In this document: positions 1 to 64,000 of the stretch, piece by piece | Numbering within the stretch: position 1 is the stretch's first letter | Layout: each line of letters begins with the position of its first letter | Origin: Macrostomum lignano | Taxonomy: Eukaryota | Length of the DNA stretch: 64,000 nucleotides | Assembly (NCBI GenBank): GCA_002269645.1 | Contig: NIVC01002054.1 | Span: forward strand, 144,879-208,878 | Direction: 5' to 3' | Notes under the pieces: model-generated | Seen by the model: only the letters and a program-made list of their open reading frames with translations | Databases searched by the model: none | What the model was told of the DNA's origin: nothing | Made by a program: the position numbers and the translations under genes

Positions 1-535
1 GGGATATCAGTTTTACAGATCCTCAGTTGCTGGGCCAGCCTCCCAGATCCTCAGTTGCTGGGCCAGCCTCCCAGATCCTCAGTTGCTGGGCCAGCCTCCC
101 AGATCGTCAGTTGCTGGGCCAGCCTCCCAGATCCTCAGTTGCTGGGCCAGCCTCCCAGATCGTCAGTTGCTGGGCCAGCCTCCCAGATCCTCAGTTGCTG
201 GGCCAGCCTCCCAGATCGTCAGTTGCTGGGCCAGCCTCCCAGATCCACAGTTGCTGGGCCAGCCTCCCAGATCCTCAGTTGCTGGGCCAGCCTCCCAGAT
301 CGTCAGTTGCTGGGCCAGCCTCCCAGATCGTCAGTTGCTGGGCCAGCCTCCCAGATCCTCAGTTGCTGGGCCAGCCTCCCAGATCGTCAGTTGCTGGGCC
401 AGCCTCCCAGATCCTCAGTTGCTGGGCCAGCCTCCCAGATCGTCAGTTGCTGGGCCAGCCTCCCAGATCCACAGTTACCGGGCCAGCCTTCCAGTTCTTC
501 AGTTGCTTGGCACTAGCCTCCAAGATCCTCAGCTG
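1..535. repeat. 28-bp tandem minisatellite (cagttgctgggccagcctcccagatcct)n, cut by window edge
   Basis: About 19 near-identical 28-bp units with no spacers. It generates the repetitive ORFs at 27-697. Confidence 0.97.
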
Positions 536-5862: not shown

Positions 5863-5972
5863 CAGACAGACAGCTTTACTTGTGAAACATACCGACAGAC
5901 AGGCAGACAGACAGACAGACAGACAGACAGGCAGGCAGACAGATAGACAGACAGACAGACAGGCAGGCAGAC

Positions 5973-6009
<37 letters not shown>

Positions 6010-6048
6010 GGCAGACATACAGACAGGCAGGCAGACAGGCAGGCAGGC

Positions 6049-6085
<37 letters not shown>

Positions 6086-6492
6086 GGCAGACAGACAGAC
6101 AGGCAGGCAGGCAGGCAGACAGACAGACAGACAGACAGGCAGACATACAGACAGACAGACAGACAGGCAGGCAGGCAGACAGACAGACAGACAGACAGAC
6201 AGGCAGACAGACAGGCAGACAGACAGACAGGCAGGCAGGCAGGCAGGCAGACAGACAGACAGACAGACAGACAGACAGGCAGGCAGGAAGACAGACAGGC
6301 AGACAGACAGACAGACAGACAGACAGACAGGCAGACAGACAGACAGACAGACAGACAGACAGGCAGACAGACAGGCAGACAGACAGACAGGCAGGCAGGC
6401 AGGCAGACAGACAGACAGACAGGCAGACAGACAGACAGACAGACAGGCAGACAGACAGGCAGACAGACAGACAGACAGACAGACAGACAGGC

Positions 6493-6525
<33 letters not shown>

Positions 6526-6978
6526 GGCAGGCAGGCAGGCAGACAGACAGACAGACAGACAGGCGGACATACAGACAGACAGACATACAGGCAGGCAGGC
6601 AGGCAGACAGACAGACAGACAGACAGACAGACAGGCAGACAGACAGGCAGACAGACAGACAGACAGACAGACAGGCAGACAGACAGGCAGACAGACAGAC
6701 AGGCAGGCAGGCAGGCAGGCAGACAGACAGACAGACAGACAGGCAGGCAGGCAGACAGACAGACAGACAGGCAGGCAGACAGACAGACAGGCAGACAGAC
6801 AGACAGACAGACAGACAGACAGGCAGACAGACAGGCAGACAGACAGACAGGCAGGCAGGCAGGCAGACAGACAGACAGACATACAGATAGACAGACAGAC
6901 AGGCAGACAGACAGACTGACAGGCAGACAGGCAGACAGACAGATAGACAGACAGACAGGCAGACAGACACAGACAAGC

Positions 6979-7011
<33 letters not shown>

Positions 7012-7226
7012 GGCAGGCAGGCAGGCAGACAGACAGACAGACAGACAGGCAGACATACAGACAGACAGACAGACAGGCAGGCAGACAGACAGACAGACAG
7101 ACAGGCAGACAGACAGGCAGACAGACAGACAGGCAGGCAGGCAGGCAGGCAGACAGACAGACAGACAGGCAGACAGACAGACAGACAGACAGGCAGGCAG
7201 GCAGACAGACAGACAGACAGACAGGC

Positions 7227-7259
<33 letters not shown>

Positions 7260-7346
7260 GGCAGACAGACAGACAGGCAGGCAGGCAGGCAGACAGACAG
7301 ACAGACAGACAGGCAGACAGACAGACAGACAGGCAGACAGACAGGC

Positions 7347-7387
<41 letters not shown>

Positions 7388-7502
7388 GGCAGGCAGGCAG
7401 GCAGACAGACAGACAGACAGACAGGCAGACATACAGACAGACAGACATACAGGCAGGCAGGCAGGCAGACAGACAGACAGACAGACAGGCAGACAGACAG
7501 GC

Positions 7503-7535
<33 letters not shown>

Positions 7536-7704
7536 GGCAGACAGACAGGCAGACAGACAGACAGACAGGCAGGCAGGCAGGCAGGCAGACAGACAGACAG
7601 ACAGACATACAGATAGACAGACAGACAGGCAGACAGACAGACTGACAGGCAGACAGGCAGACAGACAGATAGACAGACAGACAGGCAGACAGACACAGAC
7701 AAGC

Positions 7705-7757
<53 letters not shown>

Positions 7758-7760
7758 GGC

Positions 7761-7791
<31 letters not shown>

Positions 7792-7866
7792 TAGACAGAC
7801 AGACTGACAGGCAGACAGGCAGACAGACAGATAGACAGACAGACAGGCAGACAGACACAGACAAGC

Positions 7867-7923
<57 letters not shown>

Positions 7924-7933
7924 GGCAGACAGA
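5863..7933. repeat. About 2-kb (CAGA/CAGG)n compound microsatellite
   Basis: Continuous cagacaga/caggcagg. Source of the SVCL/DRQT pseudo-ORFs. Confidence 0.98.
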
Positions 7934-8349
7934 CTTGTTTTCAACAGCAATAAGGCCACAGTTGAGAAAGCAGTGTTTAAAAATTCATTACAGAATAGCA
8001 ATCAATCACAGTTTCAATACTGGGTGGAAATGTAGGAATATTTTATTTTCTTAATAACCTCACAATATTGGTAGCAGGTTACCATCGCATGATTTTAAGC
8101 AACTAAAATGACGAAGAATACCATTACAATTTAATCATTATAAGAATCAACATAAGAATAGAATAGAATAGAAATATAATTGATAATTATTTTAGAAAAC
8201 AAAAAGTCATTTGTCTTTCAAGTGACCTTTGATTGTGGAATTGAGCAACAGAGGAAATGTAAAGTTGATATGAACTTATAACTTACAAAAATAGTAATCA
8301 TAATCAAATATTCAGCAAAGATGTTACGAATGAAGAATGAAAAAAAACT

Positions 8350-29457: not shown

Positions 29458-30964
29458 ATGCGAGGCCTAATATTTCTAACCGCTGACAATTCTTTGAAGT
29501 TGAAGAACGATCTGCAAGATCCAAAGCCGAACAGCGAAGAGGTCGTAGTACGGGTTAGCCATTGCGGAGTATGCGGTACAGACCTGCACATCATGCAAGG
29601 TCACTTTCCCGTGGCTGTGGAGACTCAACTAGTCCTGGGCCACGAGTTCACCGGCTGGCTGCAGGAAGCGAATACCGATAGCAAGAAAAATCAAGACGGA
29701 AACTTCGGCACTCCCGTGTTTGTCAATCCGAATGGTCGGTGCGGCTACTGCATCGGTTGCCAAGAGGTTTGTTTCACTTAGCAACACAGTGAAATAATAA
29801 ATATTCGGACAAAAGCTGCGGGCACCCTGACGCAAGGTCTTCGGAGACATCGTCTCACAACCAGAGTTGACGGCAATTTTGTCCATTTCGCTGACTCCTA
29901 AGCACAAACAAGCGCACCAATACTGTACGCAAGCACGCACTCACACACGCTCACACAGGGGTGGACAGCGGCCCTCTGACTTTCGAATCGTCAGGCACGA
30001 CACCCACGGTGCGTTAAAAGCTGGCCCTCACTGGTGTGAATCGCACGACAACCACTCAACCAACTTGGTTGCACACGGAATCAAACCAGGGGTCGTTTTG
30101 CTAGAGTCAGACGGGTTTACCGCTGAGCTGCTCTGCCCCTAGCAACAGGCATTGCATAAACCAGCCTTAATGAATTTTTCCGTGAAAAAACACTCGATCA
30201 AAACACCCTATTAGGGCCGAGTGCACTTCTGCGGCTACCGAGCTATGGGTGCCGCTTCAGTGGGCGTCGGTCGAGACGGCGGCTGGGCGGAGTTCGTGGC
30301 GGTGCCAGCCAATCAGGTTCACCGAATGCCTAAAGATCTGCCGATGTCAACTGGAATTCTGGTTGAGCCAATCAGCTGCGTGCTTCACGGCTACGATCGG
30401 CTGTTCACCGCTGGAGCAGCCAAGCAGCTGGACCCAACTGACTCTGTGCTCATTCTGGGTGCTGGCATCATCGGTCTGCTTTGGGCCTGCCTGCTGCACC
30501 AGCGTGGCTACCGGACCATTCACATCAGCGACATTTCTCCGGAGCGACGCCAGGTCGTTACTAACATGAAATTAAACGGCATGTCGCCTAAACAACCAAC
30601 CGAGCTGCTTAGCAACACCTACCAGCTGATCGTGGACTGCACCGGAGTGCCAAAGGCGCTCGAGTCGGCCTATAAAAGCCTGTCTAGCGGTGGCATCCTG
30701 TGCGTGTTCGGATGCGCACCAGAGGGAGTCAAGCTGAACCTGCCGTATTATGACCTGGTCAACCGAGAGATCACCGTTGTGTTTTGTCGCGTTAATCCGT
30801 TCACAAGCGACCGAGCTATCGACCTGACGCGTCGTTTACATCTGGACGGCTACCTGGACTTGGACCGGCTGGGCATTAAGGTATTCGGACTCGACCAGCA
30901 TCAGCAAGCCTTTGAAATGCTGAACAATCGTCAGGCACCTAAGGTTGCCTTCCGGCTAAACTGA
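29458..30964 (+). CDS. Zn-dependent medium-chain dehydrogenase (threonine/sorbitol/arabitol-DH-like), copy 1, ~352 aa
   Basis: Exons 29458-29766 and 30215-30964 (phase 0). Motifs: CGVCGTDLH (catalytic Zn), VLGHEFTG, structural Zn CGYCIGCQEGRVHFC, DGGWAEF, EPISC..HG and Rossmann ILGAGIIG. Confidence 0.93.
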
Positions 30965-31632: not shown

Positions 31633-32766
31633 ATGCGCGGCCTAGTGTTTGTAACTAGCGACAGCTCACTACAGCTGCAGGATGATATTCAAGTGCCTAA
31701 GCCGACTTCTGAAGAGCTACTAGTACGGGTTAGCCACTGCGGTGTATGCGGAACAGACCTGCACATCATGCAGGGCCATTTCCCGGTGGCTGCTCGATCT
31801 ACTCTCGTACTCGGACACGAGTTCACTGGCTGGCTAATTGATGGCGATGGAAGCCAGCCAAGTAAAGGCAAATCCAACACGCCTGTTTTTGTCAATCCGA
31901 ACGGACAATGCGGCTACTGCAACGAGTGCCAACGGGTAAAACTTTCATGGAAGCATTTAATTGACATTTGAAATGCACTACTGGATAGAAAGACAAGTTT
32001 TTGCATATCATTGCAGGGTCTGGTGCACTTCTGCCCCCAGCGTACCTTAGGCGCTGGAGCTGTAGGTCTGGCAAGAGACGGCGGCTGGGCGGAGTTCGTG
32101 GCGGTGCCAGCCAATCAGGTTCACCGAATGCCTAAAGATCTGCCGGTGTCAACTGGAATTCTCGTTGAGCCAATCAGCTGCGTACTACACGGCTACGATC
32201 GGCTGTTCACCGCTGGAGCAGCCAAGCAGCTGGACCCAACTGACTCTGTGCTCATTCTGGGTGCTGGCATCATCGGCCTGCTCTGGGCCTGCCTGCTGCA
32301 CCAGCGGGGCTACCGGACCATCCACATCAGCGACATCTCTCCGGAGCGACGCCAGGCTGTTGAAAACTTGAAACTTGACGGCGTGTTGCCTAGGCAACCA
32401 ACCGAGCTGCTTAGCAACACCTACCAGCTGATTGTGGATTGCACCGGAGTGCCAAAGGCGCTCGAGTCGGCCTATAAAAGCCTGTCTAGCGGTGGCATCC
32501 TGTGCGTGTTCGGATGCGCCCCGGAGGGAGTCAAGCTGAACCTGCCGTATTATGACCTGGTCAACCGAGAGATCACCGTTGTGTTTTGTCGCGTTAATCA
32601 GTTTGCTAGCGATCGAGCCATCGACCTGACGTACCAGCTGCACCGACAGGGTTACCTGGACTTCAACCGGTTGGGCATTCAAGTCTACCCACTCGATCAG
32701 CACCAAAAAGCATTCGAAACGTTAGGCAAGCGTCAGGCACCGAAGGTGGCCTTCCAACTGGGCTGA
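31633..32766 (+). CDS. Zn-dependent medium-chain dehydrogenase, tandem copy 2, ~350 aa
   Basis: Exons 31633-31935 and 32017-32766 (81-nt GT-AG intron at the same position as copy 1). Same motifs as copy 1. Confidence 0.93.
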
Positions 32767-33462: not shown

Positions 33463-35298
33463 TCAATCGAAAGCGGCTCTTTTACGCTTAGCTCCAACAA
33501 TTAATTTTTGCACTTCAACAGCTTTGCTCGCCTCCGAATGAGTTGGATCCACGTGATAATTTGGATCGGTGAACAGCGCGCCAAATCGTTCGTCGGCTGC
33601 CACATCGGCTGCTGTCACTGCCGAGTGAGCACCTGCGACCCGGTCGGCAACTAGCATTGCCAACTCCTGCTCACTAGCCGGCATTTCTCCTTCGCCTTCG
33701 CCACTGTCACCTTCGTCACTATCGCCGCTGCCGCCGGCTCCGTCAGCCTTAGAAGGCAGCAGGCCAGCTTTAGCCAGTTTAGCCCGTTTCGCTTGCTCCT
33801 TTAATCGGCGACGCCTCGTGCGCTTGCGAGATTCTTTCGGCTCCGATTGCTCCTGCTGCTTCTGGCCCTTGGCACTTGACTTGGCCTTAGCATCGACGTC
33901 CTGCATGGCTAAAGCGATATCGTCGGGCAGCTCGTCGTCTGAGAAGGTGGCCGGCAACTCGCTGCCATTGTCGGCGTTATCTTCGGCTTTGTCGGCTCCG
34001 ACATCGTCTCCTAACAGCGCCCGACGAAGCTTCACCGTTCTGGCTTTGATGGCGTCACTGTCCTCTTCATCATTGTCGGATTCATCGCTACTCAAATTGA
34101 GAAACTCCGACAGTCTATTAAGATCCGGATCGTCTTCGTTGAAATCGGTCTTGTTGAACAGGCCCTGCAGGTAGCGAGTTCGCTCAGTCGGTGTCTCGTC
34201 CCAGGTTAGGCCGACTTTTGTACGGTTTAATAGACCAGCGGTTAGTTTGCGCGGCTTATAAGCAGCCGGGTCCAGACCCGTGCACCGCGTTACAAGATGA
34301 CGCCACTCGTCTGGCACATCGTCCGGACCGCCGAACTCCATACCCGCCGGCACGTAGCTCAATCTAAGACACCCGCCGGTGCTTTCCACCTCTAGACCGG
34401 AGCACTGCTCATAGACACTGGTTGCGGCTGGAGTGCAATCAAACTCCGCTACAGCGTAATAGTACCACAATCGTTTTAGCTGGTAGCGTCGAAGACTTCG
34501 ACGATAAGAGCCAGACGAAGTTGACGACTTCTTAGCCGGATCGGACGACGCTTTTCGGCGCAACTCCAACGGTCCCGCTTTGGCCTCTTCGGCCATTCGA
34601 CGTTGACCGAATTTCGAGGGATAAACTGTGACACTTAGCAAGCGACCAACAGACGATGGACAGTGACTGGAGAGCAGCATAAACAGATCGGTAGCTTTGA
34701 TCTGCTCCCAGTCTTGCTGAGTAACAGCTAGTCGATTTGTTGGAACAACCGACTGGTCGTTTTCTTCATCAATCGCTGCGCTGGACGAGCGTTCGAGATT
34801 GCGAAACTCCTCGTCGCTGCTGCTTCTCGCTTCGCTGTCGCTGCCTTCTTCATCATTGTCTGCCTCATTTTGCTCATCATCATCATCATCCTCTTCATCT
34901 GAGTCGGATTCTTCCTCAGCTACTTCTTCATCTTCTTCGTCTTCATCCTTATCCACAGCATCCTCACTCTCTTGATCTTCTTGGTTGTCAGAACTAGCTT
35001 CGACCTCATCATTATCATCCTCATCCTCACCGTGACGACCCTGTTTCAATCCGTAGAACCTGCTCAGATCCTGTCGCGAGCTCATGGCCACTGGCCTGCC
35101 CCTCTTATCGCTGCGTACGCTGGTGGAGAACTCAGGATCTGTAAACATGGCGCCAAATCGATCGTCAATTTCAACGCGAGTTGCTTTGCGAGCCGAAGCC
35201 GATCGATAGCGCGGATCGGTGGTCACGTGACCGAAGCGCGGATCCGAGCGCCATTCTTCGTCGCGGTTGCCTGCTGCGTTGCGACGCTTCTTAACCAT
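33463..35298 (-). CDS. ESF1: ESF1 (pre-rRNA processing nucleolar protein, NUC153 domain), 611 aa, intronless
   Basis: N-terminal DPRF...IDDRFGAMFTDPEF..DKRGRP, then an acidic tract. Core motifs: TNRLAVTQQDWEQIKATDLF, VTVYPSKFG..RMAEE..GP, LRRYQL.RLWYYYAV, Y..C.GLE.E, LTWDETP..R. C-terminal DERFGALF.DPNYHVDPT (NUC153). Confidence 0.93.
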   Translation of the reverse strand: MVKKRRNAAGNRDEEWRSDPRFGHVTTDPRYRSASARKATRVEIDDRFGAMFTDPEFSTSVRSDKRGRPVAMSSRQDLSRFYGLKQGRHGEDEDDNDEVEASSDNQEDQESEDAVDKDEDEEDEEVAEEESDSDEEDDDDDEQNEADNDEEGSDSEARSSSDEEFRNLERSSSAAIDEENDQSVVPTNRLAVTQQDWEQIKATDLFMLLSSHCPSSVGRLLSVTVYPSKFGQRRMAEEAKAGPLELRRKASSDPAKKSSTSSGSYRRSLRRYQLKRLWYYYAVAEFDCTPAATSVYEQCSGLEVESTGGCLRLSYVPAGMEFGGPDDVPDEWRHLVTRCTGLDPAAYKPRKLTAGLLNRTKVGLTWDETPTERTRYLQGLFNKTDFNEDDPDLNRLSEFLNLSSDESDNDEEDSDAIKARTVKLRRALLGDDVGADKAEDNADNGSELPATFSDDELPDDIALAMQDVDAKAKSSAKGQKQQEQSEPKESRKRTRRRRLKEQAKRAKLAKAGLLPSKADGAGGSGDSDEGDSGEGEGEMPASEQELAMLVADRVAGAHSAVTAADVAADERFGALFTDPNYHVDPTHSEASKAVEVQKLIVGAKRKRAAFD

Positions 35299-50929: not shown

Positions 50930-51490
50930 TTAGATCCTTAGTTGCTAGGTTGCCTCACCTTCCTAGATGCTTAGTTGCTAAGCCACCTTCAAATCCTCAG
51001 TTGCTAAGCCATCTTAGTTGCTAGGCTGTCTACAACTCTTCTAGATCCTGGGTTGCTAGGCCATCCCACTTTCCTAGATCCTAAATTGCTAGGCTAGGCC
51101 CCCCTACTTTCCTAGATCCTGAGTTGCTAGGCCATCCTAACCCCACCTTCCTAGATCCTGAGTTGCTAGGCCACCCTAATTGCATCTTCCTAGATCCTAA
51201 ATTGCTAGGCCCCCCATCCTACTAGATCCTTGGTTGCTAGGCCACCCTCAGGAGGCACCCTCCCAGATCCTCAGTCGCTGGGCCACCCTCCCAGACCCAG
51301 ATCCTCAGTTGCTAGGCCATCCTCCCATATTCCTCAGTTGCTAAGCCAGCCTCCTAGATCCTCAGTTGTTGGGCCAGCCTCCTAGATCTTCAGTTGCTAG
51401 GCTACCCTCCCAGATCCTTAATTGCTGGGCCAGTCTCCCAGATCCTCAGTTGCTAGGCCACTCTACCAGATCATTAGTTGCTAGGCCATA
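50930..51490. repeat. Degenerate member of the 28-bp cagttgctgggccagcctcccagatcct satellite family
   Basis: Units such as cctcagttgctaggccatcctccca and cctcagttgttgggccagcctcctagat. Confidence 0.85.
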
Positions 51491-51822
51491 GAGGTTTAAG
51501 TGGGTTCATAAAAATTCTTTAAAAAATCATAAAAATTCTTACAGCAAACACTTAAACAGAAGTTACAATATATGTACCTGCGCCATTTTATAAAGTGATG
51601 GCTTCCTCAGACCTCAGTGTCATGTAAGATTCTTCTATTCTAACTTAGTTGTCTACAAATCATTTGAATATAGACTACTATTATCAGTAGTAGATAAAGC
51701 GTCATTCCACTCTACTCTTAATTCGATTCATGAGTCTGTCTTTCTGTCTTAGTGTTTGTCTTTCCGTCTGTCTGTCTGCTGACTACTGTACAATAAAATC
51801 AAAAAACTTTCCAGCGCACCAT

Positions 51823-53906
51823 ATGGCAGCCGCCAAGCCAAAAGTCTCCAACCCGCTGAGCCTGAGCCTGCCAGACCGGGCACTCAGCGGCATCCTGCGC
51901 TGCCTGGACCTGCGCAGCCTGGCCGCCTGTCGTCTCGTCTGCCGCGCCTGGCTGTCTCGCATCGACGCTTTTTGCAGCGGCGGCGCCTGCATTGGTGGTG
52001 GCTTGTTGACCGCTGGTCGCGCCGTCCGTCAGCTGTGCGGCGGCGGCAGCAGTGCAAAATCGCCGACCGCCTGGCAGGCGCTGCAGCTGTCTAGACGGTG
52101 CAGCTTGGTGTGCTCCACGCTGAAAGAGACGGACGTGCAGTGCGAGGAGGAGCTGCTGCCGAGCCTGCCGGACCTGCAGCTGCTGCCCATGGTGAGTGCT
52201 CGGCGCTCGCTCACAAATCAATGCTGCAATATTGTGTGGCTATAAGAAACGAACCAGAAAATGCGCAGCTGGAAATTTAAACTACTTATAGTAGGTTTCA
52301 GTCTACCATGGGGGCCATGGATTTTATGGTGGGGGGGGGCAAAGTAAGGAATTCTACATGACTAAGTTCCTACATAATTTTGAGAATCGGTGTTGTTAGC
52401 ACTCGTTTTGGCGCCGCAGGCACTTATTTTAGCGCCACAGACATTCATTTTAGCGCCTCAGGCACTCATTTTAGCGCCGGAGACACTGAGACACTCATTT
52501 TAGCGCCGGAGACACTGAGACACTTATTTTGGCGCCCCAAAGCAAAATTATTGATTTCCATAGCATTTAAATGTCCCTCCTATAGCTTTCACTCGGTGGG
52601 GAGTCGGGGACATGCCCCCCCTGTCCCCCCGGTGGCGACGCCCCTGCGTGAAAGTGAATGACTCTTGTACTTGAGGTCCCAAGTTCGAGCCCCTATGCTC
52701 GTCGCAAAGTTTCCTACGTAACACCGTTTGCAGTCGGACAAGGGCGGCCGCGGCCGCCTGATGCTGCGAACTCGGATGCTGGACCGTGGCCGCTGCCGCC
52801 TTATCAATCGGCTACTGAAAGTGCCCCAAATACCCGAGGATGCCGAGTGCAGCTTGAAGTTCTGCGCCACCTCCTGGATCGGTCTGGTCATCTGCCGCTT
52901 CAACGATGGCACATGCGTGGTGACGCTGCCGCTGAGGCCTGGCGACGGCGGACTGGGCGGAGACGAAGTGCTGACCCAGGCGGTGATCAGCCCGCCTATA
53001 TCCGGCATTTTCCCTGTTGTCATGGCAACGCACAAGTGCGCCAAGTGCGGCCAAGACCAGCTGCTGGTCTACAGTATGAGCTTGGCTGCGCCCCAGCTCA
53101 GCCTGTGGTCGCTGCCGCCCGCCGCCGACTCGTTCGGCAGGTCGCCGCAAGTCATCGGCAAGCCGCACAGCGTCCTGCAAAGTGGTGTCGTGGGCAGCGA
53201 TGAAGAGGCCCTGCGGATGCTGCAGGTGGCGTCGCCTGTCGAGTCGGAGTTTGCCGTGTTCGCCGTGATGAACAGCAACGATGAGGACACTCTGACCACC
53301 GTCAGCTTCGTCCGCGCCGGGTGCCGCCAGCTCAGCCTCCTCCGCAGCCGCATCAGCCTGGGCGGAGACGAGTGCGGCTTCATCACGGACTCCAGCGACG
53401 GCGTCCTCGTCACCATGGTGATCGACGGCCTTCGCCGACGTCGTGGACAGGCTCGCTGTCAGCTGAGACTCCGAGTGACTCGTCACGTGCTGGCCGGACC
53501 GAAGTGCACTGTGTGTCCAGAGACCTTCCTGTACAACTGCCCGATGCCGTCTGCTGAGGTGCCCGAATCCCAGCCTAAGCTAATTGGCCACGGCAGGCAG
53601 CTGCTGTGCGTGACCTTCATGGTGCCGCACTGCCTGGCTCTGTATCGGCCGAGCTGTCCGCAGCCTCCGGTCGTCATCGACCTGCCCAACGACCAGCCGT
53701 TGCACTTTCTGTGGCCGGTCGGCAACTGGCTGAACTGCGGCATCGACCCGGAGCGGCAGAGCTGCCCGCTGCTGGTGTCAGCTGGCATGGAGCGAGATGA
53801 AGCAAACAAACAGAGCCACCTGCTGAGCTTGAGCTTCTCTAAGGATGCTCCGCAGTCAGCTGTGTGGCAGCGGACTGTGCAGTTTGGCAGCTCGGTTTCT
53901 GAGTAA
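51823..53906 (+). CDS. F-box protein with uncharacterised C-terminal domain, ~513 aa, 2 exons
   Basis: Exons 51823-52191 and 52734-53906 (phase 0, GT-AG). N-terminal F-box LSLPDRALSGILRCLDLRSLAACRLVCRAW. The C-terminal region is beta-rich and not recognised. Confidence 0.85.
52307..52646 (+). mobile_element. Second copy of the hAT-type MITE family, in the F-box intron
   Basis: Body matches 4868-5137. The 3' end tggcgacgcccctg is the exact reverse complement of the 5' end (caggggcgtcgcca) of the other copy. The left end is degenerate. Confidence 0.8.
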
Positions 53907-55883: not shown

Positions 55884-57604
55884 ATGCAGCAGGACTTCTT
55901 GCATCAGCGCATGCCGGACCACGCGCTCAGCTGCATTCTGCACCGCCTGGACCTGCGCAGCTTTGCCGCCTGTCGCCTTGTCTGCCGGAGCTGGCACTGT
56001 CGAATCGACGACAGCCGCGTTCTGGAAGCGGCCCGGACCTCCTGGCACCTGTGCGCGATGTTAACCGGCGGTCAGGCTTGGAAGGTGGCCACACAGAGAG
56101 GCTTGGTGTGCTCGGAGCTGGAGGAGAGGGTCGTGACCTCCGAGGACGAGCTGGTGCCCATTCTAGAGGACCTGGAGCTGCTGGCATGGTGAGTTCCTGA
56201 AGCCATGCAGGAAGTATTTATTTACCTAGTTTAAACTAGCACTATACTACAGTATAGCTAGTTTCGTCATTGCAACGACAGAGGTCATAGAGAAGTCATG
56301 CATAGCTGGAATCCAGGGCCGTCATAGCATAGTATCGATCGGGGTTCATAGCTGGTCCCCGAAATCCACTTGCAGCATGATCAAACGGGTAACGGAGGCC
56401 TGCAGATGTACACCAGGATGCTGGACTGCCGCATGCTGCATCGAACTTTCCGAGTGCCCCAGGTGTTCGCTGATGTCAGCTACATGACGCGATACTGCTC
56501 CACCTCTTGGGTGGGCCTGGCACGGTGCGAGCGAAATGGAGTCTATGGAGGCGTGCTGGCGGTGCCTTTGAAGCCGGGCAGAAGCGGCCTGGGGAGAGAT
56601 AAGCTCTAATTCAGGCTGACATTAGAGTAATGATTACAACCTCCATGGCTTATGACGTTGTCATGGCAACACACAAGTGCCCCACCTGCGGGGACACACA
56701 GCTGCTGCTACTGAACAGTTTCTTGGTGGACCAGCTGAAGCTGTGGTCGCTGCCGCCCGCTGGCGTCTTCGTGCCACCGCCTGTGCTGACGCAGCCGCAC
56801 AGCGTCCTGCACGACGTCACAAATGACGCCGGCAACGAAGAGGGGCTTCGGCTGCTGCAGGTTGCGTCGCCCGTCGAGTCGGAGTTTGCCGTGATGAACA
56901 GCAACGAGTGCGACACTCGGACCACCGTCAGCTTCGTCCGCGCCTTTTGCCGCCAGCTCAGCCTCATCCGAAGCCGCATCAGCCTGGGCGGAGACGAGTG
57001 CGGCTTCATTGCGGACTCCAGCGACCGCGTTCTCGTCACCATGGTGATTGACAGCCTTCGCCGACGTCGTGGGCAGACTCGGCGCTAGCGGAGACTTCGA
57101 GTGACTCGTCACGTGCTGACTGGGCCGAGCTGCCAAGTGCAGGCTGAGACCTTCTTGTACAACTGCCCGATGCCGTCGCTGAGGTGCCGACTCCCGTCCC
57201 GAGCTGCTTGGCCACGGCAGGAAGCTGCTGTGCGTGACCTTCGTTGAACTGGAGCGCCTGGCTCTGTACCGGCCGAGTTTCCGCAGCCTCTGGTCGTCAT
57301 CAACTTTTCCCACCCACTCGATAATTCATATTTCTCGTGGCCAGTTGGAGACTGGCTTGACCGCGGCATGGACCCTGAGAGGCAGAGCTGCCCGCTGCTG
57401 CTGGTTTTGGGGTTTCAGCCTTTTTCTCCAGGCACCGACCAGCTGGTCTCCGTGCCCAGCCACCTGCTGAGCTGGACCTGCGCCAAGGAGATCCCGGAGA
57501 CCGCCGCTGTGTGGCAACAGGCCGTGCGGCTTGGCAGCTTCGGGTCGAGTGACGGACTGCTGCATCTGAGTCTCCATTTACCAATTAAAGTTGTTTTTTG
57601 TTAA
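55884..57604 (+). pseudogene. F-box pseudogene, tandem paralogue of 51823-53906
   Basis: F-box RMPDHALSCILHRLDLRSFAACRLVCRSW, same intron position and clear paralogy (VVMATHKC, SPVESEFAV, RISLGGDECGF, DPERQSCPLL). However, the donor is out of phase by 1 nt, there are frameshifts near 56610, 57190 and 57275, and an in-frame TAG at 57086-57088 where copy 1 has CAG. Confidence 0.82.
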
Positions 57605-57728: not shown

Positions 57729-57892
57729 AATTACCCCAGCTAATGCCAGTACAGCTGGGTGAACTGCAGCAATGCAGAGTTAAGCAAGTGTCTTGCTTGC
57801 TTAAGGACACAAACTGTTTCAGTGGGATCGAGAATCGAACCCCCAACCTTCAAGTCGCGAGTCCGACGCTCTAACCACTAGGCTACAATCCC
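57729..57892 (-). mobile_element. tRNA-derived CORE-like SINE, second copy
   Basis: Reverse complement reads gggattgtagcctagtggttagagcgtcgg..gggttcgattc..tgtgtccttaagcaa..cagttcacccagctgta..attagctggggtaatt, homologous to 13942-14102. Confidence 0.85.
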
Positions 57893-61574: not shown

Positions 61575-62720
61575 GCCGTCTGCAGATCCCCATTAACCCA
61601 TCTGCAGATCCCCATCATTCCATCTGCAGATCCCCACCATTCGATCTGCAGATCCCCACCATTCCATCTGCAGATCCCCACCACCATCTGCAGATCCCCA
61701 CAAACCCATCTGCAGATCCCCATTAACCCATCTGCAGATCCCCACCAACCCATCTGCAGATCCCCATTCATCTGCAGATCCCCACCATTCCATCTGCAGA
61801 TCCCCATTAACCCATCTGCAGATCCCACCAAACCCACCTGCAGATCCCACCAACCCATCTGCAGATCCCACCAACCCACCTGCAGATCCCCACCCATCTG
61901 CAGATCCCCACCATTCCATCTGCAGATCCCCACCAACCCATCTGCAGATCCCACCATTCCATCTGCAGATCCCCACCAACCCATCTGCAGATGCCCACCA
62001 TTCCATCTGCGGATCCCCACTAACCCATCTGCAGATCCCCACCAACCCATCTGCAGATCCCCACTAACCCATCTGCAGATCCCCACCATTCCATCTGCAG
62101 ATGCCCACCATCCCATCTGCAGATCCCCACCATTCCATCTGCAGATCCCCATTAACCCATCTGCAGATCCCCACCATTCCATCTGCAGATCCCCACCATT
62201 CCATCTGCAGATCCCCACAAACCCACCTGCAGATCCCCACCAACCCATCTGCAGATCCCCACCATTCCATCTGCAGATCCCCACCAACCCATCTGCAGAT
62301 GCCCACCATCCCATCTGCAGATCCCCACCATTCCATCTGCAGATCCCCATTAACCCATCTGCAGATCCCCACCATTCCATCTGCAGATCCCCACCATTCC
62401 ATCTGCAGATCCCCACAAACCCACCTGCAGATCCCCACCAACCCATCTGCAGATCCCCACCATTCCATCTGCAGATCCCCACCAACCATCTGCAGATGCC
62501 CACCATCCATCTGCAGATCCCCACCATTCCATCTGCAGATCCCCATTAACCCATCTGCAGATCCCCACCATTCCATCTGCAGATCCCCACCATTCCATCT
62601 GCAGATCCCCATTAACCCATCTGCAGATCGCCATTAAACCATCTGCAGATCCCCACATCCCATCTGCAGATCCCACCATCCTATCTTCAGATCCCCACCA
62701 TCCCGTCTGCAAATCCCCAA
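61575..62720. repeat. ~19-21-bp minisatellite (ccatctgcagatccccacca[tt/ac])n
   Basis: About 55 copies. Source of the GICRW/SADG pseudo-ORFs. Confidence 0.97.
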
Positions 62721-63091
62721 TTCCCCGACAAGGACAACTGAAGTTACGTTATTTAAGTTGTCGTTGTTCCCCGACCCTATCCATTCCATCTTTTATGAAA
62801 AAAACCTACATAGTGACTGAAATAGTTTATAAACACATATACCCATGACTGCTAATATAGTTAGTGAATATGTAATTATGTAAACTATTTTATATTGTCA
62901 TTAAGTTGACTTTAAAAGCATTACGATCTGATTTAGATATGATGCTCCCTCCTTTTTGACCACCTGGTAATTAAAAGCATTACCTTATTGCTTATAGTCT
63001 ACATATTAAATACGCATGAAAAAGTTTGTACTTTTTTATTTCCAGCATCAATAGCTGCAAATATTTTCATTCCTTCGATAATTTCAGAAAA

Positions 63092-63829
63092 ATGGCGGCT
63101 GCTGCAGCTTCTGAATCGTCTACCGGTACACCTGAACAAATAAAAGAACTGCGTAACTGGCATGGCAGTCAGAACAAAATGTTCGTGAACACCTCCGACG
63201 GGTGCATATACAATGTACAACATTTCGGATTCGAATTGGGAAAGAACTTACGCTATCGATTGGTTGGAAGCAATTTTGAAATTGAAAGAGAAGGCCATTT
63301 CTACATTGACTCATTTAAATGGGTAGACGTGCTAAAAGTATACCACTTCGATACAGAAGACCGAAACAAGCCAGCAGATCCAGCAAGACGAATAGCAGAG
63401 CATGATGAAAGTTTCGAAAAACTTAAAAACCGGGTTGCTAATCAGGAAGAAATCCCTCCTGTTAAACTATATCCTTCTACTGGCGAGCATTCGGACCAGT
63501 ATAGTCTAATTGATGGAAGGCACCGGATTGCTGCCGTTCACCATCACGGATATCAATTCATTTTAGCTCTAGTGGAGGACATTCCATCGACGGATATATC
63601 AGAGTATGATGACACTGTGTTGACTAAACAATATCAATTTTGGCTCGATTACTCATACGTGTGCTCAGTGGCGCTTACGATTGGTGAGGAAATTCTTAGA
63701 AAATGTAGGATATTAGGAAGGGATGTCGGAATTTTACCAAATGAAACAGAAGTAACTGTTAATGTGTGCAGTCGTAACTGCGAGAATAAGTTTCGCATTA
63801 AGTTGGCTCAAGCTGTGGATAATTTATGA
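63092..63829 (+). CDS. Intronless ParB/sulfiredoxin-fold (ParB N-terminal-like) domain protein, ~245 aa
   Basis: Non-repetitive open frame; the likely ATG is at 63092, just after a tttcag acceptor. FEKLKNRVANQEEIPPVKLY...YSLIDGRHRIAAVHHHGYQFILALV fits the ParB-N pattern (helix, PI.V, Y.LIDG.HR..A...G...I.A.V). Confidence 0.75.
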   Translation: MAAAAASESSTGTPEQIKELRNWHGSQNKMFVNTSDGCIYNVQHFGFELGKNLRYRLVGSNFEIEREGHFYIDSFKWVDVLKVYHFDTEDRNKPADPARRIAEHDESFEKLKNRVANQEEIPPVKLYPSTGEHSDQYSLIDGRHRIAAVHHHGYQFILALVEDIPSTDISEYDDTVLTKQYQFWLDYSYVCSVALTIGEEILRKCRILGRDVGILPNETEVTVNVCSRNCENKFRIKLAQAVDNL

Positions 63830-64000
63830 CCCGAAGAAAGCCGAAAAAATTCAAGTCTTCTTTGCGACGTGCAAAGGGTCTGCCTGGAAATTCAGCTGTG
63901 ATTCTGTTGAAGGAGTGGCTAATAATCTGGCTTACAATATATGCAAAAAAGTTTAACTTAAGGTTGTGTGGCAGGTGTAGCTGTGCTTAATGTTCTACCC

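What the first reader, a model, noticed from the sequence alone, without database searches (positions are those of the whole stretch)
63092..63829. Intronless ParB-like (DGRHR) gene in an animal genome: horizontal-transfer or viral candidate
Seen: a 245-aa intronless ORF, visibly AT-richer than the neighbouring genes, with a ParB/Srx signature PPV..Y.LIDGRHR..A...G...I.A.V. Established: the animal member of this fold, sulfiredoxin, has a catalytic Cys in GGCHR, whereas DGxHR is typical of prokaryotic and phage ParB-type CTPase/nuclease domains. Inference: this may be a non-sulfiredoxin ParB-N protein acquired from bacteria, a virus or a mobile element and now host-expressed, since a splice acceptor lies 4 nt before the ATG. 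The flanking domains are unrecognised.
Basis: partly seen in the sequence, partly recalled or inferred. Interest (0 to 1): 0.78.

Follow-up and report, generated by a model that had tools for sequence, protein, structure and literature searches.

The report
Orphan ParB-fold gene in a flatworm
A real, intact single-exon gene in a Macrostomum flatworm genome encodes a very divergent ParB/sulfiredoxin-type nucleotide-binding domain; its only detectable relative is one anonymous transcript-like contig, and no bacterial or viral donor was found.

Summary
Window 63092-63829 (+) is an uninterrupted 245-codon ORF, far longer than chance allows. It carries D-G-R-H-R at residues 141-145, is AT-richer than its neighbours (GC3 37% vs 53-70%), and has TTTCAG ending 4 nt before the ATG. 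The host is Macrostomum lignano or a very close relative: the neighbouring ESF1 protein is 98% identical and about 22 kb is collinear. Residues about 75-169 match ParB N-terminal (ParB-CTPase/Srx fold) profiles. Each match is below the curated cut-off, but ParB is the top hit in Pfam, NCBIfam, PHROGs and the PDB. The G-x-H-R aligns on the nucleotide-binding G-E-R-R of solved ParBs. It is not sulfiredoxin, because it has no cysteine at the catalytic position. It is not a partition ParB, because it has no HTH domain and scores below cut-off. An exhaustive search of 1.84 billion cluster representatives found one relative (27% identity), on an AT-rich, mRNA-like 1075-nt contig. Searches of prokaryotic genomes, metagenomes, IMG/VR, phages and plasmids found nothing. 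Horizontal or viral origin is therefore neither supported nor excluded. Being intronless is not informative here, because ESF1 is single-exon too. Expression is unproven. Structure prediction failed (pLDDT 32-37). Best reading: a lineage-restricted, non-Srx ParB-fold NTP-binding protein with family-specific flanking regions. Interest is moderate.

The parts
63082..63087 (+). Splice-acceptor-like hexamer TTTCAG. An exon would begin at 63088, 4 nt before the ATG.
   Evidence: Read directly. Fits the M. lignano SL trans-splice acceptor consensus [T/C]TNCAG (PMC8629364). The motif density in the window is 0.0027 per nt, so it is suggestive only. Usage was not shown.
63092..63829 (+). Complete single-exon coding sequence, 245 aa plus TGA stop: an orphan ParB-fold protein.
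   Evidence: Open-frame length is far beyond the shuffles. One homologue, P0001, at E 1.3e-6 against 1.84 billion representatives, collinear over residues 18-230.
63134..63313 (+). N-terminal family-specific region (about aa 15-74), with the conserved L-R-N-W at aa 20-23. No known domain.
   Evidence: Conserved with P0001. No Pfam, NCBIfam or PHROG family. Only weak hits to repetitive designed 'Cake' propellers in the PDB, with no stretch passing on its own.
63314..63598 (+). ParB N-terminal / ParB-CTPase / Srx-fold-like domain (about aa 75-169).
   Evidence: Pfam PF02195, aa 96-169, E 0.0045, 17.4 bits, below the 26.3 cut-off. NCBIfam TIGR00180, aa 92-168, E 3.7e-4. PHROG ParB-like, E 1.5e-4. 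The family profile hits solved ParB, Noc and Spo0J at E 0.009-0.1. P0001 alone also ranks ParB first.
63371..63394 (+). Box I-like stretch (aa 94-101). P97, R100 and I101 are invariant in the two members.
   Evidence: Aligned with the proline/arginine stretch that precedes the first helix of Spo0J and ParB chains. Invariant columns are listed.
63512..63526 (+). D-G-R-H-R (aa 141-145): the Box II / P motif (G-x-x-R) of the fold. It reads D-G-I-H-R in the homologue.
   Evidence: Aligned on the G-E-R-R of 1vz0, 4umk, 7ol9 and 6t1f. D, G, H and R are invariant. G-x-x-R is named as the conserved P motif in PMC12704722.
63599..63826 (+). C-terminal family-specific region (aa 170-245), with a conserved Y-x-x-W-x-x-Y-S patch at aa 181-188. 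No HTH or other known domain.
   Evidence: for conservation. No family hit. No PDB sequence hit.
61579..62719 (.). Neighbour: a 22-bp minisatellite array (about 52 copies), 372 nt upstream of the ATG. It is the last repeat block before the gene.
   Evidence: The unit was found nowhere else in the window or in L015.

Best explanation
The feature is a genuine, intact, single-exon nuclear gene of a Macrostomum flatworm (M. lignano or a very close relative). It encodes a 245-aa soluble protein. The middle third (about aa 75-169) is a highly divergent ParB-CTPase/sulfiredoxin-fold nucleotide-binding domain, and two regions specific to its tiny family flank it.

Inferred mechanism. The conserved Box I-like P..R and the G-x-H-R P motif bind the phosphates of a nucleoside triphosphate. 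ATP is the more likely ligand, because the His-Arg version of the motif gave a local match to the SerK kinase profile rather than matching the G-E-R-R seen in the solved CTP clamps. The unrecognised N- and C-terminal regions would supply the substrate or partner specificity. On this reading the protein acts as a small NTP-dependent enzyme or switch. It is neither a DNA-partition clamp nor a peroxiredoxin repair enzyme.

Origin. The family is rare and lineage-restricted. Its origin, whether vertical with fast divergence or an old transfer, cannot be decided from present data.

Shown: the ORF, the host context, the domain-level similarity, motif conservation, and the absence of relatives. Inferred: nucleotide binding, the preference for ATP, the role of the flanks, and expression.
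For: - ORF real and intact.
- Host context: the neighbouring ESF1 ORF is 98% identical to M. lignano BOX15_Mlig006702g1. Window 22.6-45.1 kb is collinear with M. lignano contig NIVC01002721.1 at 90-96% identity, with several minisatellite arrays at matching positions.
- ParB-N is the top match in four independent libraries, for each of the two family members separately: Pfam, NCBIfam TIGR00180 at E 3.7e-4 and 4.1e-4, PHROGs, and the PDB.
- All alignments place G142-x-x-R145 on the G-E-R-R of solved ParB, Noc and Spo0J. D, G, H and R are invariant between members at 27% overall identity.
- A local match to the SerK serine kinase profile covers aa 134-169 (E 0.006). SbnI appears among the weak PDB hits.
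- The homologue is collinear over 213 residues, including both flanks, so the three-part architecture is a family trait.
Against: - Every profile match is below the curated cut-off (17.4 vs 26.3 bits; 20.3 vs 58.45 bits).
- The 3D fold could not be confirmed. AlphaFold2 gave pLDDT 31.8 from the single sequence and 36.8 from the two-sequence alignment.
- No expression evidence exists. The protein is absent from the annotated M. lignano proteome and from all Logan-derived proteins in the collection.
- GC3 is 16-33 points below the neighbouring genes. That would also fit a foreign or very young gene.
- Nucleotide specificity cannot be read from sequence (PMC12704722).
- The window ends 171 nt after the stop codon, so the downstream context is unknown.
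Confidence: 0.6

Rival explanations
1. Horizontal acquisition. The gene entered the flatworm lineage from a bacterium, phage or large DNA virus and was kept as a host gene.
For: The ParB-CTPase fold is overwhelmingly prokaryotic or phage-borne and often sits on mobile elements. In eukaryotes the usual representative is sulfiredoxin (PMC12704722). GC3 is 37% against 53-70% in neighbouring genes. Distribution is extremely patchy, with one relative among 1.84 billion representatives. D-G-x-H-R-I-A-A-V also occurs in two real phage proteins that gave sub-threshold GmrSD_N and ParBc_2 matches.
Against: No donor-side relative of the whole protein was found in prokaryotic genomes, metagenomes, IMG/VR, phages or plasmids. 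None appeared among 15 billion predicted proteins either. The one relative sits on an mRNA-like contig with an AATAAA near its 3' end. Intronlessness is shared with host ESF1. The AT-rich composition equals that of the local non-coding DNA. Any transfer would have to be old, or from an unsampled donor.
Confidence: 0.2
2. The ORF is cargo of a virus-like or transposable insertion that continues beyond the window end. It is the first visible gene of an integrated element.
For: The ORF lies at the extreme 3' edge of the window, after a 5.5-kb gene-free AT-rich stretch and an array. Its composition differs from the host genes. Its stop overlaps an ATG (A-T-G-A) that opens a 54-codon ORF. The fold is common on mobile elements.
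Against: No terminal or inverted repeats, and no integrase, transposase or capsid-like ORFs, lie within 57.5-64.0 kb. The tail 62720-64000 is single-copy in the window. No paralogues exist in the window or in any protein collection, which argues against a multi-copy element. No IMG/VR relative was found. The 54-codon ORF is short and ends inside the window.
Confidence: 0.1
3. The ORF is silent or decaying: a recently born or recently inactivated gene that is not expressed. Its ParB likeness would then have no present function.
For: It is not represented in the M. lignano annotated proteome, which is in the collection searched, nor in any transcript-derived protein. Its GC3 is close to the non-coding background. 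No canonical AATAAA occurs in the 171 nt after the stop.
Against: The frame is intact over 245 codons, whereas the longest open frame in 2000 shuffles was 182. All motif residues shared with a 27%-identical homologue are kept, which indicates constraint at least until recently. An acceptor-consensus hexamer sits 4 nt before the ATG.
Confidence: 0.07
4. Assembly chimera or contaminant DNA (food organism, symbiont) joined to flatworm sequence through the minisatellite.
For: A 1.1-kb array lies between the last recognisable host sequence and the ORF. The composition is different. The protein was not found in the earlier M. lignano annotation.
Against: The 22-bp unit was found nowhere else in the available sequence, so there is no obvious repeat to mis-join through. 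The flanks of the ORF have the same AT-rich character as other unique intergenic DNA of the window. No bacterial relative exists.
Confidence: 0.03

Closest known systems
ParB/Spo0J/Noc N-terminal CTPase domain (Pfam PF02195, NCBIfam TIGR00180; solved chains 4umk, 1vz0, 7ol9, 6t1f)
   Same: It is the best hit in every library. The alignment runs from the first strand and the Box I-like proline/arginine stretch through the Box II G-x-x-R to the following strand. The spacing of these elements is the same.
   Different: Scores are below cut-off. The motif reads G-R-H-R rather than the G-E-R-R of the solved clamps. The segment that in 6t1f follows the domain is not conserved. No HTH or dimerisation domain was detected. 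There is no ParA or parS context, and the host is eukaryotic.
Sulfiredoxin (the usual eukaryotic ParB-fold protein)
   Same: The fold superfamily is the same. Both are small soluble proteins without an HTH. The His-Arg pair at the end of the P motif is shared, as the finding states. Both are eukaryotic.
   Different: The catalytic cysteine position is Arg in the window protein and Ile in the homologue. The protein is more than twice the length of the roughly 100-aa single-domain proteins that PMC12704722 likens to sulfiredoxin, because of its conserved extra N- and C-terminal regions. No sulfiredoxin chain appeared among the PDB hits.
Free serine kinases SerK (archaea) and SbnI (Staphylococcus)
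   Same: These are ParB-fold proteins that use ATP as enzymes rather than acting as DNA clamps (PMC12704722). A local profile match covers the motif region, aa 134-169 (NF053625, E 0.006). SbnI is among the weak PDB hits.
   Different: The score is 15.7 bits against an equivalog cut-off of 380. The match covers 36 residues only. There is no evidence for the rest of the kinase architecture.
D-G-x-H/Q-R branch of the superfamily (GmrSD_N/DUF262 and ParBc_2-type phage proteins)
   Same: The nonapeptide D-G-x-H-R-I-A-A-V is identical in two IMG/VR phage ORFs. hhalign gives 87% probability over 56 columns to one of them.
   Different: Those ORFs were picked by the motif itself, so the comparison is biased. 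The window protein has no direct GmrSD_N or ParBc_2 Pfam hit. There is no similarity outside the motif region.

Membership tests
ParB/Srx (ParB-CTPase) fold superfamily | Significant match to a curated ParB N-terminal domain profile | tested here: inconclusive
   PF02195 gives E 0.0045 at 17.4 bits, below the 26.3 cut-off. TIGR00180 gives E 3.7e-4 (window) and 4.1e-4 (P0001), both below the 58.45 cut-off. PHROG ParB-like gives 1.5e-4. The PDB profile hit to 4umk gives 0.009. ParB is consistently the top hit for both members, but always below threshold.
ParB/Srx (ParB-CTPase) fold superfamily | Conserved P motif G-x-x-R (Box II) at the homologous position | tested here: met
   G142-R-H-R145 aligns on the G-E-R-R of 1vz0, 4umk, 7ol9 and 6t1f. 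It is invariant between the two members. The motif definition comes from PMC12704722.
ParB/Srx (ParB-CTPase) fold superfamily | Three-dimensional fold | tested here: inconclusive
   AlphaFold2 models have pLDDT 31.8 (single sequence) and 36.8 (two-sequence alignment). That is too low for a fold search, so none was run.
Canonical partition ParB (ParABS) | Whole-protein score above the TIGR00180 cut-off | tested here: not met
   20.3 bits against a 58.45 cut-off. Only profile positions 13-88 of 186 are matched.
Canonical partition ParB (ParABS) | HTH DNA-binding domain and C-terminal dimerisation domain after the N domain | tested here: not met
   No family hit lies outside aa 92-169. The C-terminal 81 aa have no PDB sequence hit. 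The segment after the domain is not conserved with 6t1f.
Canonical partition ParB (ParABS) | Adjacent ParA partner | tested here: inconclusive
   No ORF of 40 aa or more in 57.4-61.5 kb was recognisable as a gene by eye. These ORFs were not scanned against profile libraries. The window ends 171 nt downstream.
Sulfiredoxin | Catalytic cysteine inside the P motif, immediately before the His-Arg | tested here: not met
   That position is R143 in the window protein and Ile in P0001.
SerK / SbnI free serine kinases | Equivalog-level full-length match | tested here: not met
   NF053625 gives 15.7 bits against a 380 cut-off, over aa 134-169 only. SbnI 5uje gives E 1.5.
Horizontally transferred gene | Closest relatives lie in a non-host lineage (an identifiable donor clade) | tested here: not met
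   No prokaryotic, phage, plasmid or viral-contig relative was found. The only relative is on an mRNA-like contig of unknown organism.
Horizontally transferred gene | Composition unlike resident genes | tested here: met
   GC3 is 37% against 53-70% in four neighbouring genes. The value is close to the local non-coding DNA.
Integrated virus-like or transposable element | Element genes, terminal repeats or multiple copies around the ORF | tested here: inconclusive
   None was seen in 57.5-64.0 kb. There are no paralogues in the window. The downstream side lies outside the window.
Anti-phage defence proteins (PADLOC) | Match to any defence-system model | tested here: not met
   No hit for either member at E up to 1.

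The most novel reading that the evidence does not exclude
The ORF represents a previously undescribed animal family of ParB-CTPase-fold proteins, unrelated to sulfiredoxin in function. It would have been acquired long ago from a prokaryotic, phage or giant-virus source, and domesticated in macrostomid flatworms as an NTP-dependent enzyme or switch built with two new flanking domains.
Probability: 0.15. Interest if true: 0.65.

Novelty: new variant of a known kind. Interest (0 to 1): 0.4.

Why it matters
The ParB-CTPase fold has recently been recognised as a general NTP-binding module with many lineage-specific fusions. A 2025 survey (PMC12704722) found that its most common eukaryotic representative is sulfiredoxin. 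An intact flatworm gene would extend the eukaryotic repertoire of the fold if it keeps the phosphate-binding motif, lacks the Srx cysteine, lacks the ParB DNA-binding parts, and carries two conserved unknown regions. It would also offer a small, tractable protein in a transgenic model organism. The family has only two detectable members among about 15 billion proteins, which makes it a clean case for asking how such orphans arise. If it proves unexpressed or species-private, it is just one more orphan ORF in a repeat-rich genome.

Tried and rejected
1. Structure route. AlphaFold2 on the single sequence and on the two-sequence alignment gave pLDDT 31.8 and 36.8. No fold search was run, because a low-confidence model gives meaningless matches.

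2. More family members. None was found beyond P0001.
   - Word-indexed searches with the protein and with the two-member profile.
   - One exhaustive phmmer over 1.84 billion representatives.
   - Pattern plus tblastn scans of IMG/VR, JGI metagenomes and GTDB genomes.
   - My own back-translated patterns for the motif.
   - tblastn against phages and plasmids.
   - The short pattern found 13 IMG/VR stretches, of which only two are real proteins. These gave sub-threshold GmrSD_N and ParBc_2 matches.

3. Origin of the homologue. The run accession and its prefixes occur in no held paper. The 5' end of its contig does not match the M. lignano spliced leader above chance: 29% of shuffles score as well.

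4. Reaching the orthologous position in the public M. lignano contig. The gene would lie about 28 kb from ESF1, beyond the 10-kb flank that could be fetched. Exact-sequence look-ups of window proteins failed.

5. Flanking domains. N- and C-terminal pieces searched alone gave only spurious hits to repetitive designed propellers, or nothing. The USP7_C2 (E 0.12) and thioredoxin (E 1.5) hits were treated as noise.

6. Defence-system reading. No PADLOC hit.

7. Mobile-element reading. No inverted or long direct repeats other than the minisatellite.

8. Rfam. Only a tRNA-like hit elsewhere in the window, and no SL RNA gene.

Full report
**1. What is in the sequence**

Window 63092-63829 on the + strand is an ATG-to-TGA reading frame of 245 codons. 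The open frame around it is 269 codons. In 2000 shuffles of the local 1.3 kb, the longest open frame averaged 82 codons and never exceeded 182, so the ORF is not a chance product.

- Residues 141-145 read D-G-R-H-R (nt 63512-63526).
- The hexamer TTTCAG ends at 63087, four bases before the ATG.
- The ORF has 41.5% GC and 37% GC3. The recognisable genes nearby are much richer: ESF1 54%/53%, an F-box gene 61%/70%, and two zinc-dehydrogenase-like ORFs 57-58%/65-67%.
- The ORF's own flanks (31% and 42% GC) and the unique DNA upstream (37%) are AT-rich as well.

**2. Whose genome it is**

The 610-aa ORF at 33463-35298 (-) has ESF1 RRM and NUC153 domains. It is 98% identical over its full length to Macrostomum lignano protein BOX15_Mlig006702g1.

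The 22-kb piece of M. lignano contig NIVC01002721.1 (assembly GCA_002269645.1) around that gene is collinear with window 22.6-45.1 kb at 90-96% nucleotide identity. Several of the minisatellite arrays sit at matching positions. The window is thus M. lignano (another genome copy or another assembly) or a sibling species. Exact-sequence look-ups of window proteins fail, so it is not that same contig.

About 35% of the window is minisatellite arrays.

In the public annotation ESF1 spans exactly 611 codons, i.e. it is a single exon. An intronless gene is therefore unremarkable in this genome and cannot count as evidence of foreign origin.

**3. The domain**

The protein's best Pfam match is the ParB N-terminal domain (PF02195, residues 96-169, E 0.0045, 17.4 bits against a cut-off of 26.3). 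The other libraries agree:

| Library | Best match | Residues | E-value |
|---|---|---|---|
| NCBIfam | TIGR00180 ParB/RepB/Spo0J | 92-168 | 3.7e-4 |
| NCBIfam | SerK serine kinase model (local) | 134-169 | 0.006 |
| PHROGs | ParB-like partition protein | 133-172 | 1.5e-4 |
| PDB, single sequence | T. thermophilus Spo0J | 91-169 | 1.1 |
| PDB, two-member profile | H. pylori ParB, B. subtilis Noc, Caulobacter ParB | — | 0.009, 0.041, 0.1 |

The homologue P0001, only 27% identical, independently ranks ParB_N first in Pfam, TIGR00180 at E 4.1e-4 and 4umk first in the PDB (E 0.016).

All alignments agree on the register:

- A strand (W-V-D-V...).
- A proline/arginine stretch (P97, R100).
- A helix (S-F-E-K-L-K...).
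- A strand, then Y-S-L-I-D-G-R-H-R on the ...-G-E-R-R of the solved proteins.
- Then F-I-L-A-L-V on the next strand.

G-x-x-R is the conserved P motif (Box II) of the fold according to the 2025 survey PMC12704722. Each score alone is below its curated threshold. The agreement across four libraries, two sequences and one register still makes homology of residues about 75-169 to the ParB-CTPase/Srx fold the best reading. I put that at about 0.8.

A structural test failed for lack of relatives. AlphaFold2 gave pLDDT 31.8 and 36.8, and I ran no fold search on such models.

**4. What it is not**

It is not sulfiredoxin. The position where the finding places the catalytic cysteine is Arg here and Ile in the homologue, so it is not even conserved.

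It is not a partition ParB:

- It scores well below the equivalent cut-offs.
- No HTH or dimerisation domain was detected.
- The segment that follows the domain in Caulobacter ParB is not conserved.
- No ParA-like ORF was seen upstream.

It is not a recognisable SerK/SbnI kinase (15.7 bits against 380) and not a known defence protein.

The solved CTP clamps aligned here carry G-E-R-R. The His-Arg form is the one the finding attributes to Srx, and it is the region that gave the local SerK match. PMC12704722 describes SerK, SbnI and Srx as ATP-using members of the fold without an HTH. D-G-x-H-R also occurs in two phage ORFs that gave sub-threshold GmrSD_N and ParBc_2 matches. This is why I favour an ATP-dependent enzyme or switch over a CTP clamp. 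The same survey found that nucleotide specificity cannot be predicted from sequence, so that step is inference.

**5. The family**

An exhaustive phmmer search of 1.84 billion cluster representatives (standing for about 15 billion proteins) returned one hit: P0001, 281 aa, E 1.3e-6, collinear with residues 18-230. Word-indexed searches with the protein and with the two-member profile added nothing.

The two proteins share more than the ParB-like core:

- An N-terminal L-R-N-W motif.
- A W-V-x-V strand.
- A C-terminal Y-x-x-W-x-x-Y-S patch.

The three-part architecture is therefore a family trait. Neither flank matches any family or solved structure.

P0001 lies on a 1075-nt Logan contig from run SRR12274743. 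The contig has 65 nt before the ATG, 164 nt after the stop and an AATAAA near its end. The ORF has 29% GC and the untranslated ends 24%. It looks like a polyadenylated eukaryotic-type mRNA, but that is an inference. The organism is unknown: the accession appears in no held paper, and the contig's 5' end does not match the M. lignano spliced leader above chance.

**6. Origin**

No relative of the family turned up in any of these:

- GTDB genomes.
- JGI metagenomes.
- IMG/VR.
- GenBank phages.
- Plasmids.

The 5.5 kb upstream of the ORF holds no ORF recognisable as a gene by eye, no inverted or long terminal repeats, and only a 22-bp minisatellite found nowhere else in the available sequence. 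The last 1.3 kb is single-copy in the window.

The case for horizontal or viral acquisition therefore rests on two things: the general prokaryotic and phage bias of the fold, and the AT-rich composition. The case against rests on the lack of any donor and on the mRNA-like relative. I regard the question as open and lean towards a lineage-restricted, fast-evolving eukaryotic gene. A transfer, if there was one, is old or comes from an unsampled source.

Because the window stops 171 nt after the stop codon, an element extending downstream cannot be excluded.

**7. Expression**

TTTCAG fits the M. lignano trans-splice acceptor consensus [T/C]TNCAG. About 30% of that species' genes are trans-spliced (PMC8629364). 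The motif occurs every 370 nt or so, so its position is only suggestive.

If the published leader, which ends in ATG, were joined at 63088, that ATG would open a 9-codon out-of-frame upstream ORF overlapping the start codon.

On the negative side, annotated M. lignano proteins are present in the collection (P0002 is one). Even so, neither they nor any run-derived protein includes this ORF. The gene is either unannotated and weakly expressed, or absent from the earlier assembly. I could not reach the orthologous position, about 28 kb from ESF1 on a 146-kb contig, with the tools.

**8. Verdict**

- The gene is a real host-linked ORF with a divergent ParB-fold core. It is clearly neither sulfiredoxin nor a partition protein, and it is one of two known members of an orphan family.
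- Its horizontal or viral origin and its expression remain untested claims.
- I rate it a new variant of a known kind, of moderate interest (0.4).
- The most novel reading still open is an anciently acquired, domesticated non-Srx ParB-fold family in animals. I give it about 15%.

Noticed in passing
window 1-64000 (arrays listed): About 22.6 kb, or 35% of the window, consists of some 30 minisatellite or microsatellite arrays with units of 4-45 bp, each 0.2-2.1 kb long. Many are strongly strand-asymmetric (GC skew up to -1 or +0.8). Several of the arrays sit at matching positions in the M. lignano contig L015, so they are conserved between the two genome copies.
   Followed up: partly
window 16-532, 1329-1567 and 51259-51488: The same 28-bp unit forms arrays at three separate places up to 50 kb apart. 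It is a dispersed minisatellite family rather than a local expansion.
   Followed up: no
window 5894-7934: A 2-kb (GACA)n microsatellite of about 512 copies. It produces long spurious ORFs on both strands.
   Followed up: no
window 51730-53906 and 55884-57313 (+): Two tandem paralogous genes. Each has an F-box ORF followed by a related C-terminal ORF with no Pfam family. The translations are visibly similar.
   Followed up: partly
window 30221-30964 and 32011-32766 (+): Two tandem zinc-dehydrogenase-like ORFs (Glu_dehyd_C / ADH_zinc_N), about 90% identical at the DNA level. Both are also present and annotated in the M. lignano contig.
   Followed up: partly
window 57823-57892 (-): Rfam tRNA match just above the gathering score (32.6 bits against 29) that ARAGORN does not call. 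It may be a degenerate tRNA or a tRNA-derived repeat.
   Followed up: no
window 63826-63990 (+): The stop codon of the ParB-like ORF overlaps an ATG (A-T-G-A) that opens a 54-codon, lysine/arginine-rich ORF. It is probably chance, but it is the only visible feature downstream before the window ends.
   Followed up: no
window 63147-63160 and L001 88-101: At the conserved L-R-N-W motif the flatworm gene and the 27%-identical homologue share 14 identical nucleotides, including the synonymous positions, although the homologue's GC3 is only 26%. A second DNA-level match (69 nt, 77%) covers the D-G-x-H-R region. This is unexplained and may be chance.
   Followed up: no
window 33463-35298 (-) / L015 10001-11833: The ESF1 homologue is encoded by a single exon of 610 codons in both copies.
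   Followed up: yes
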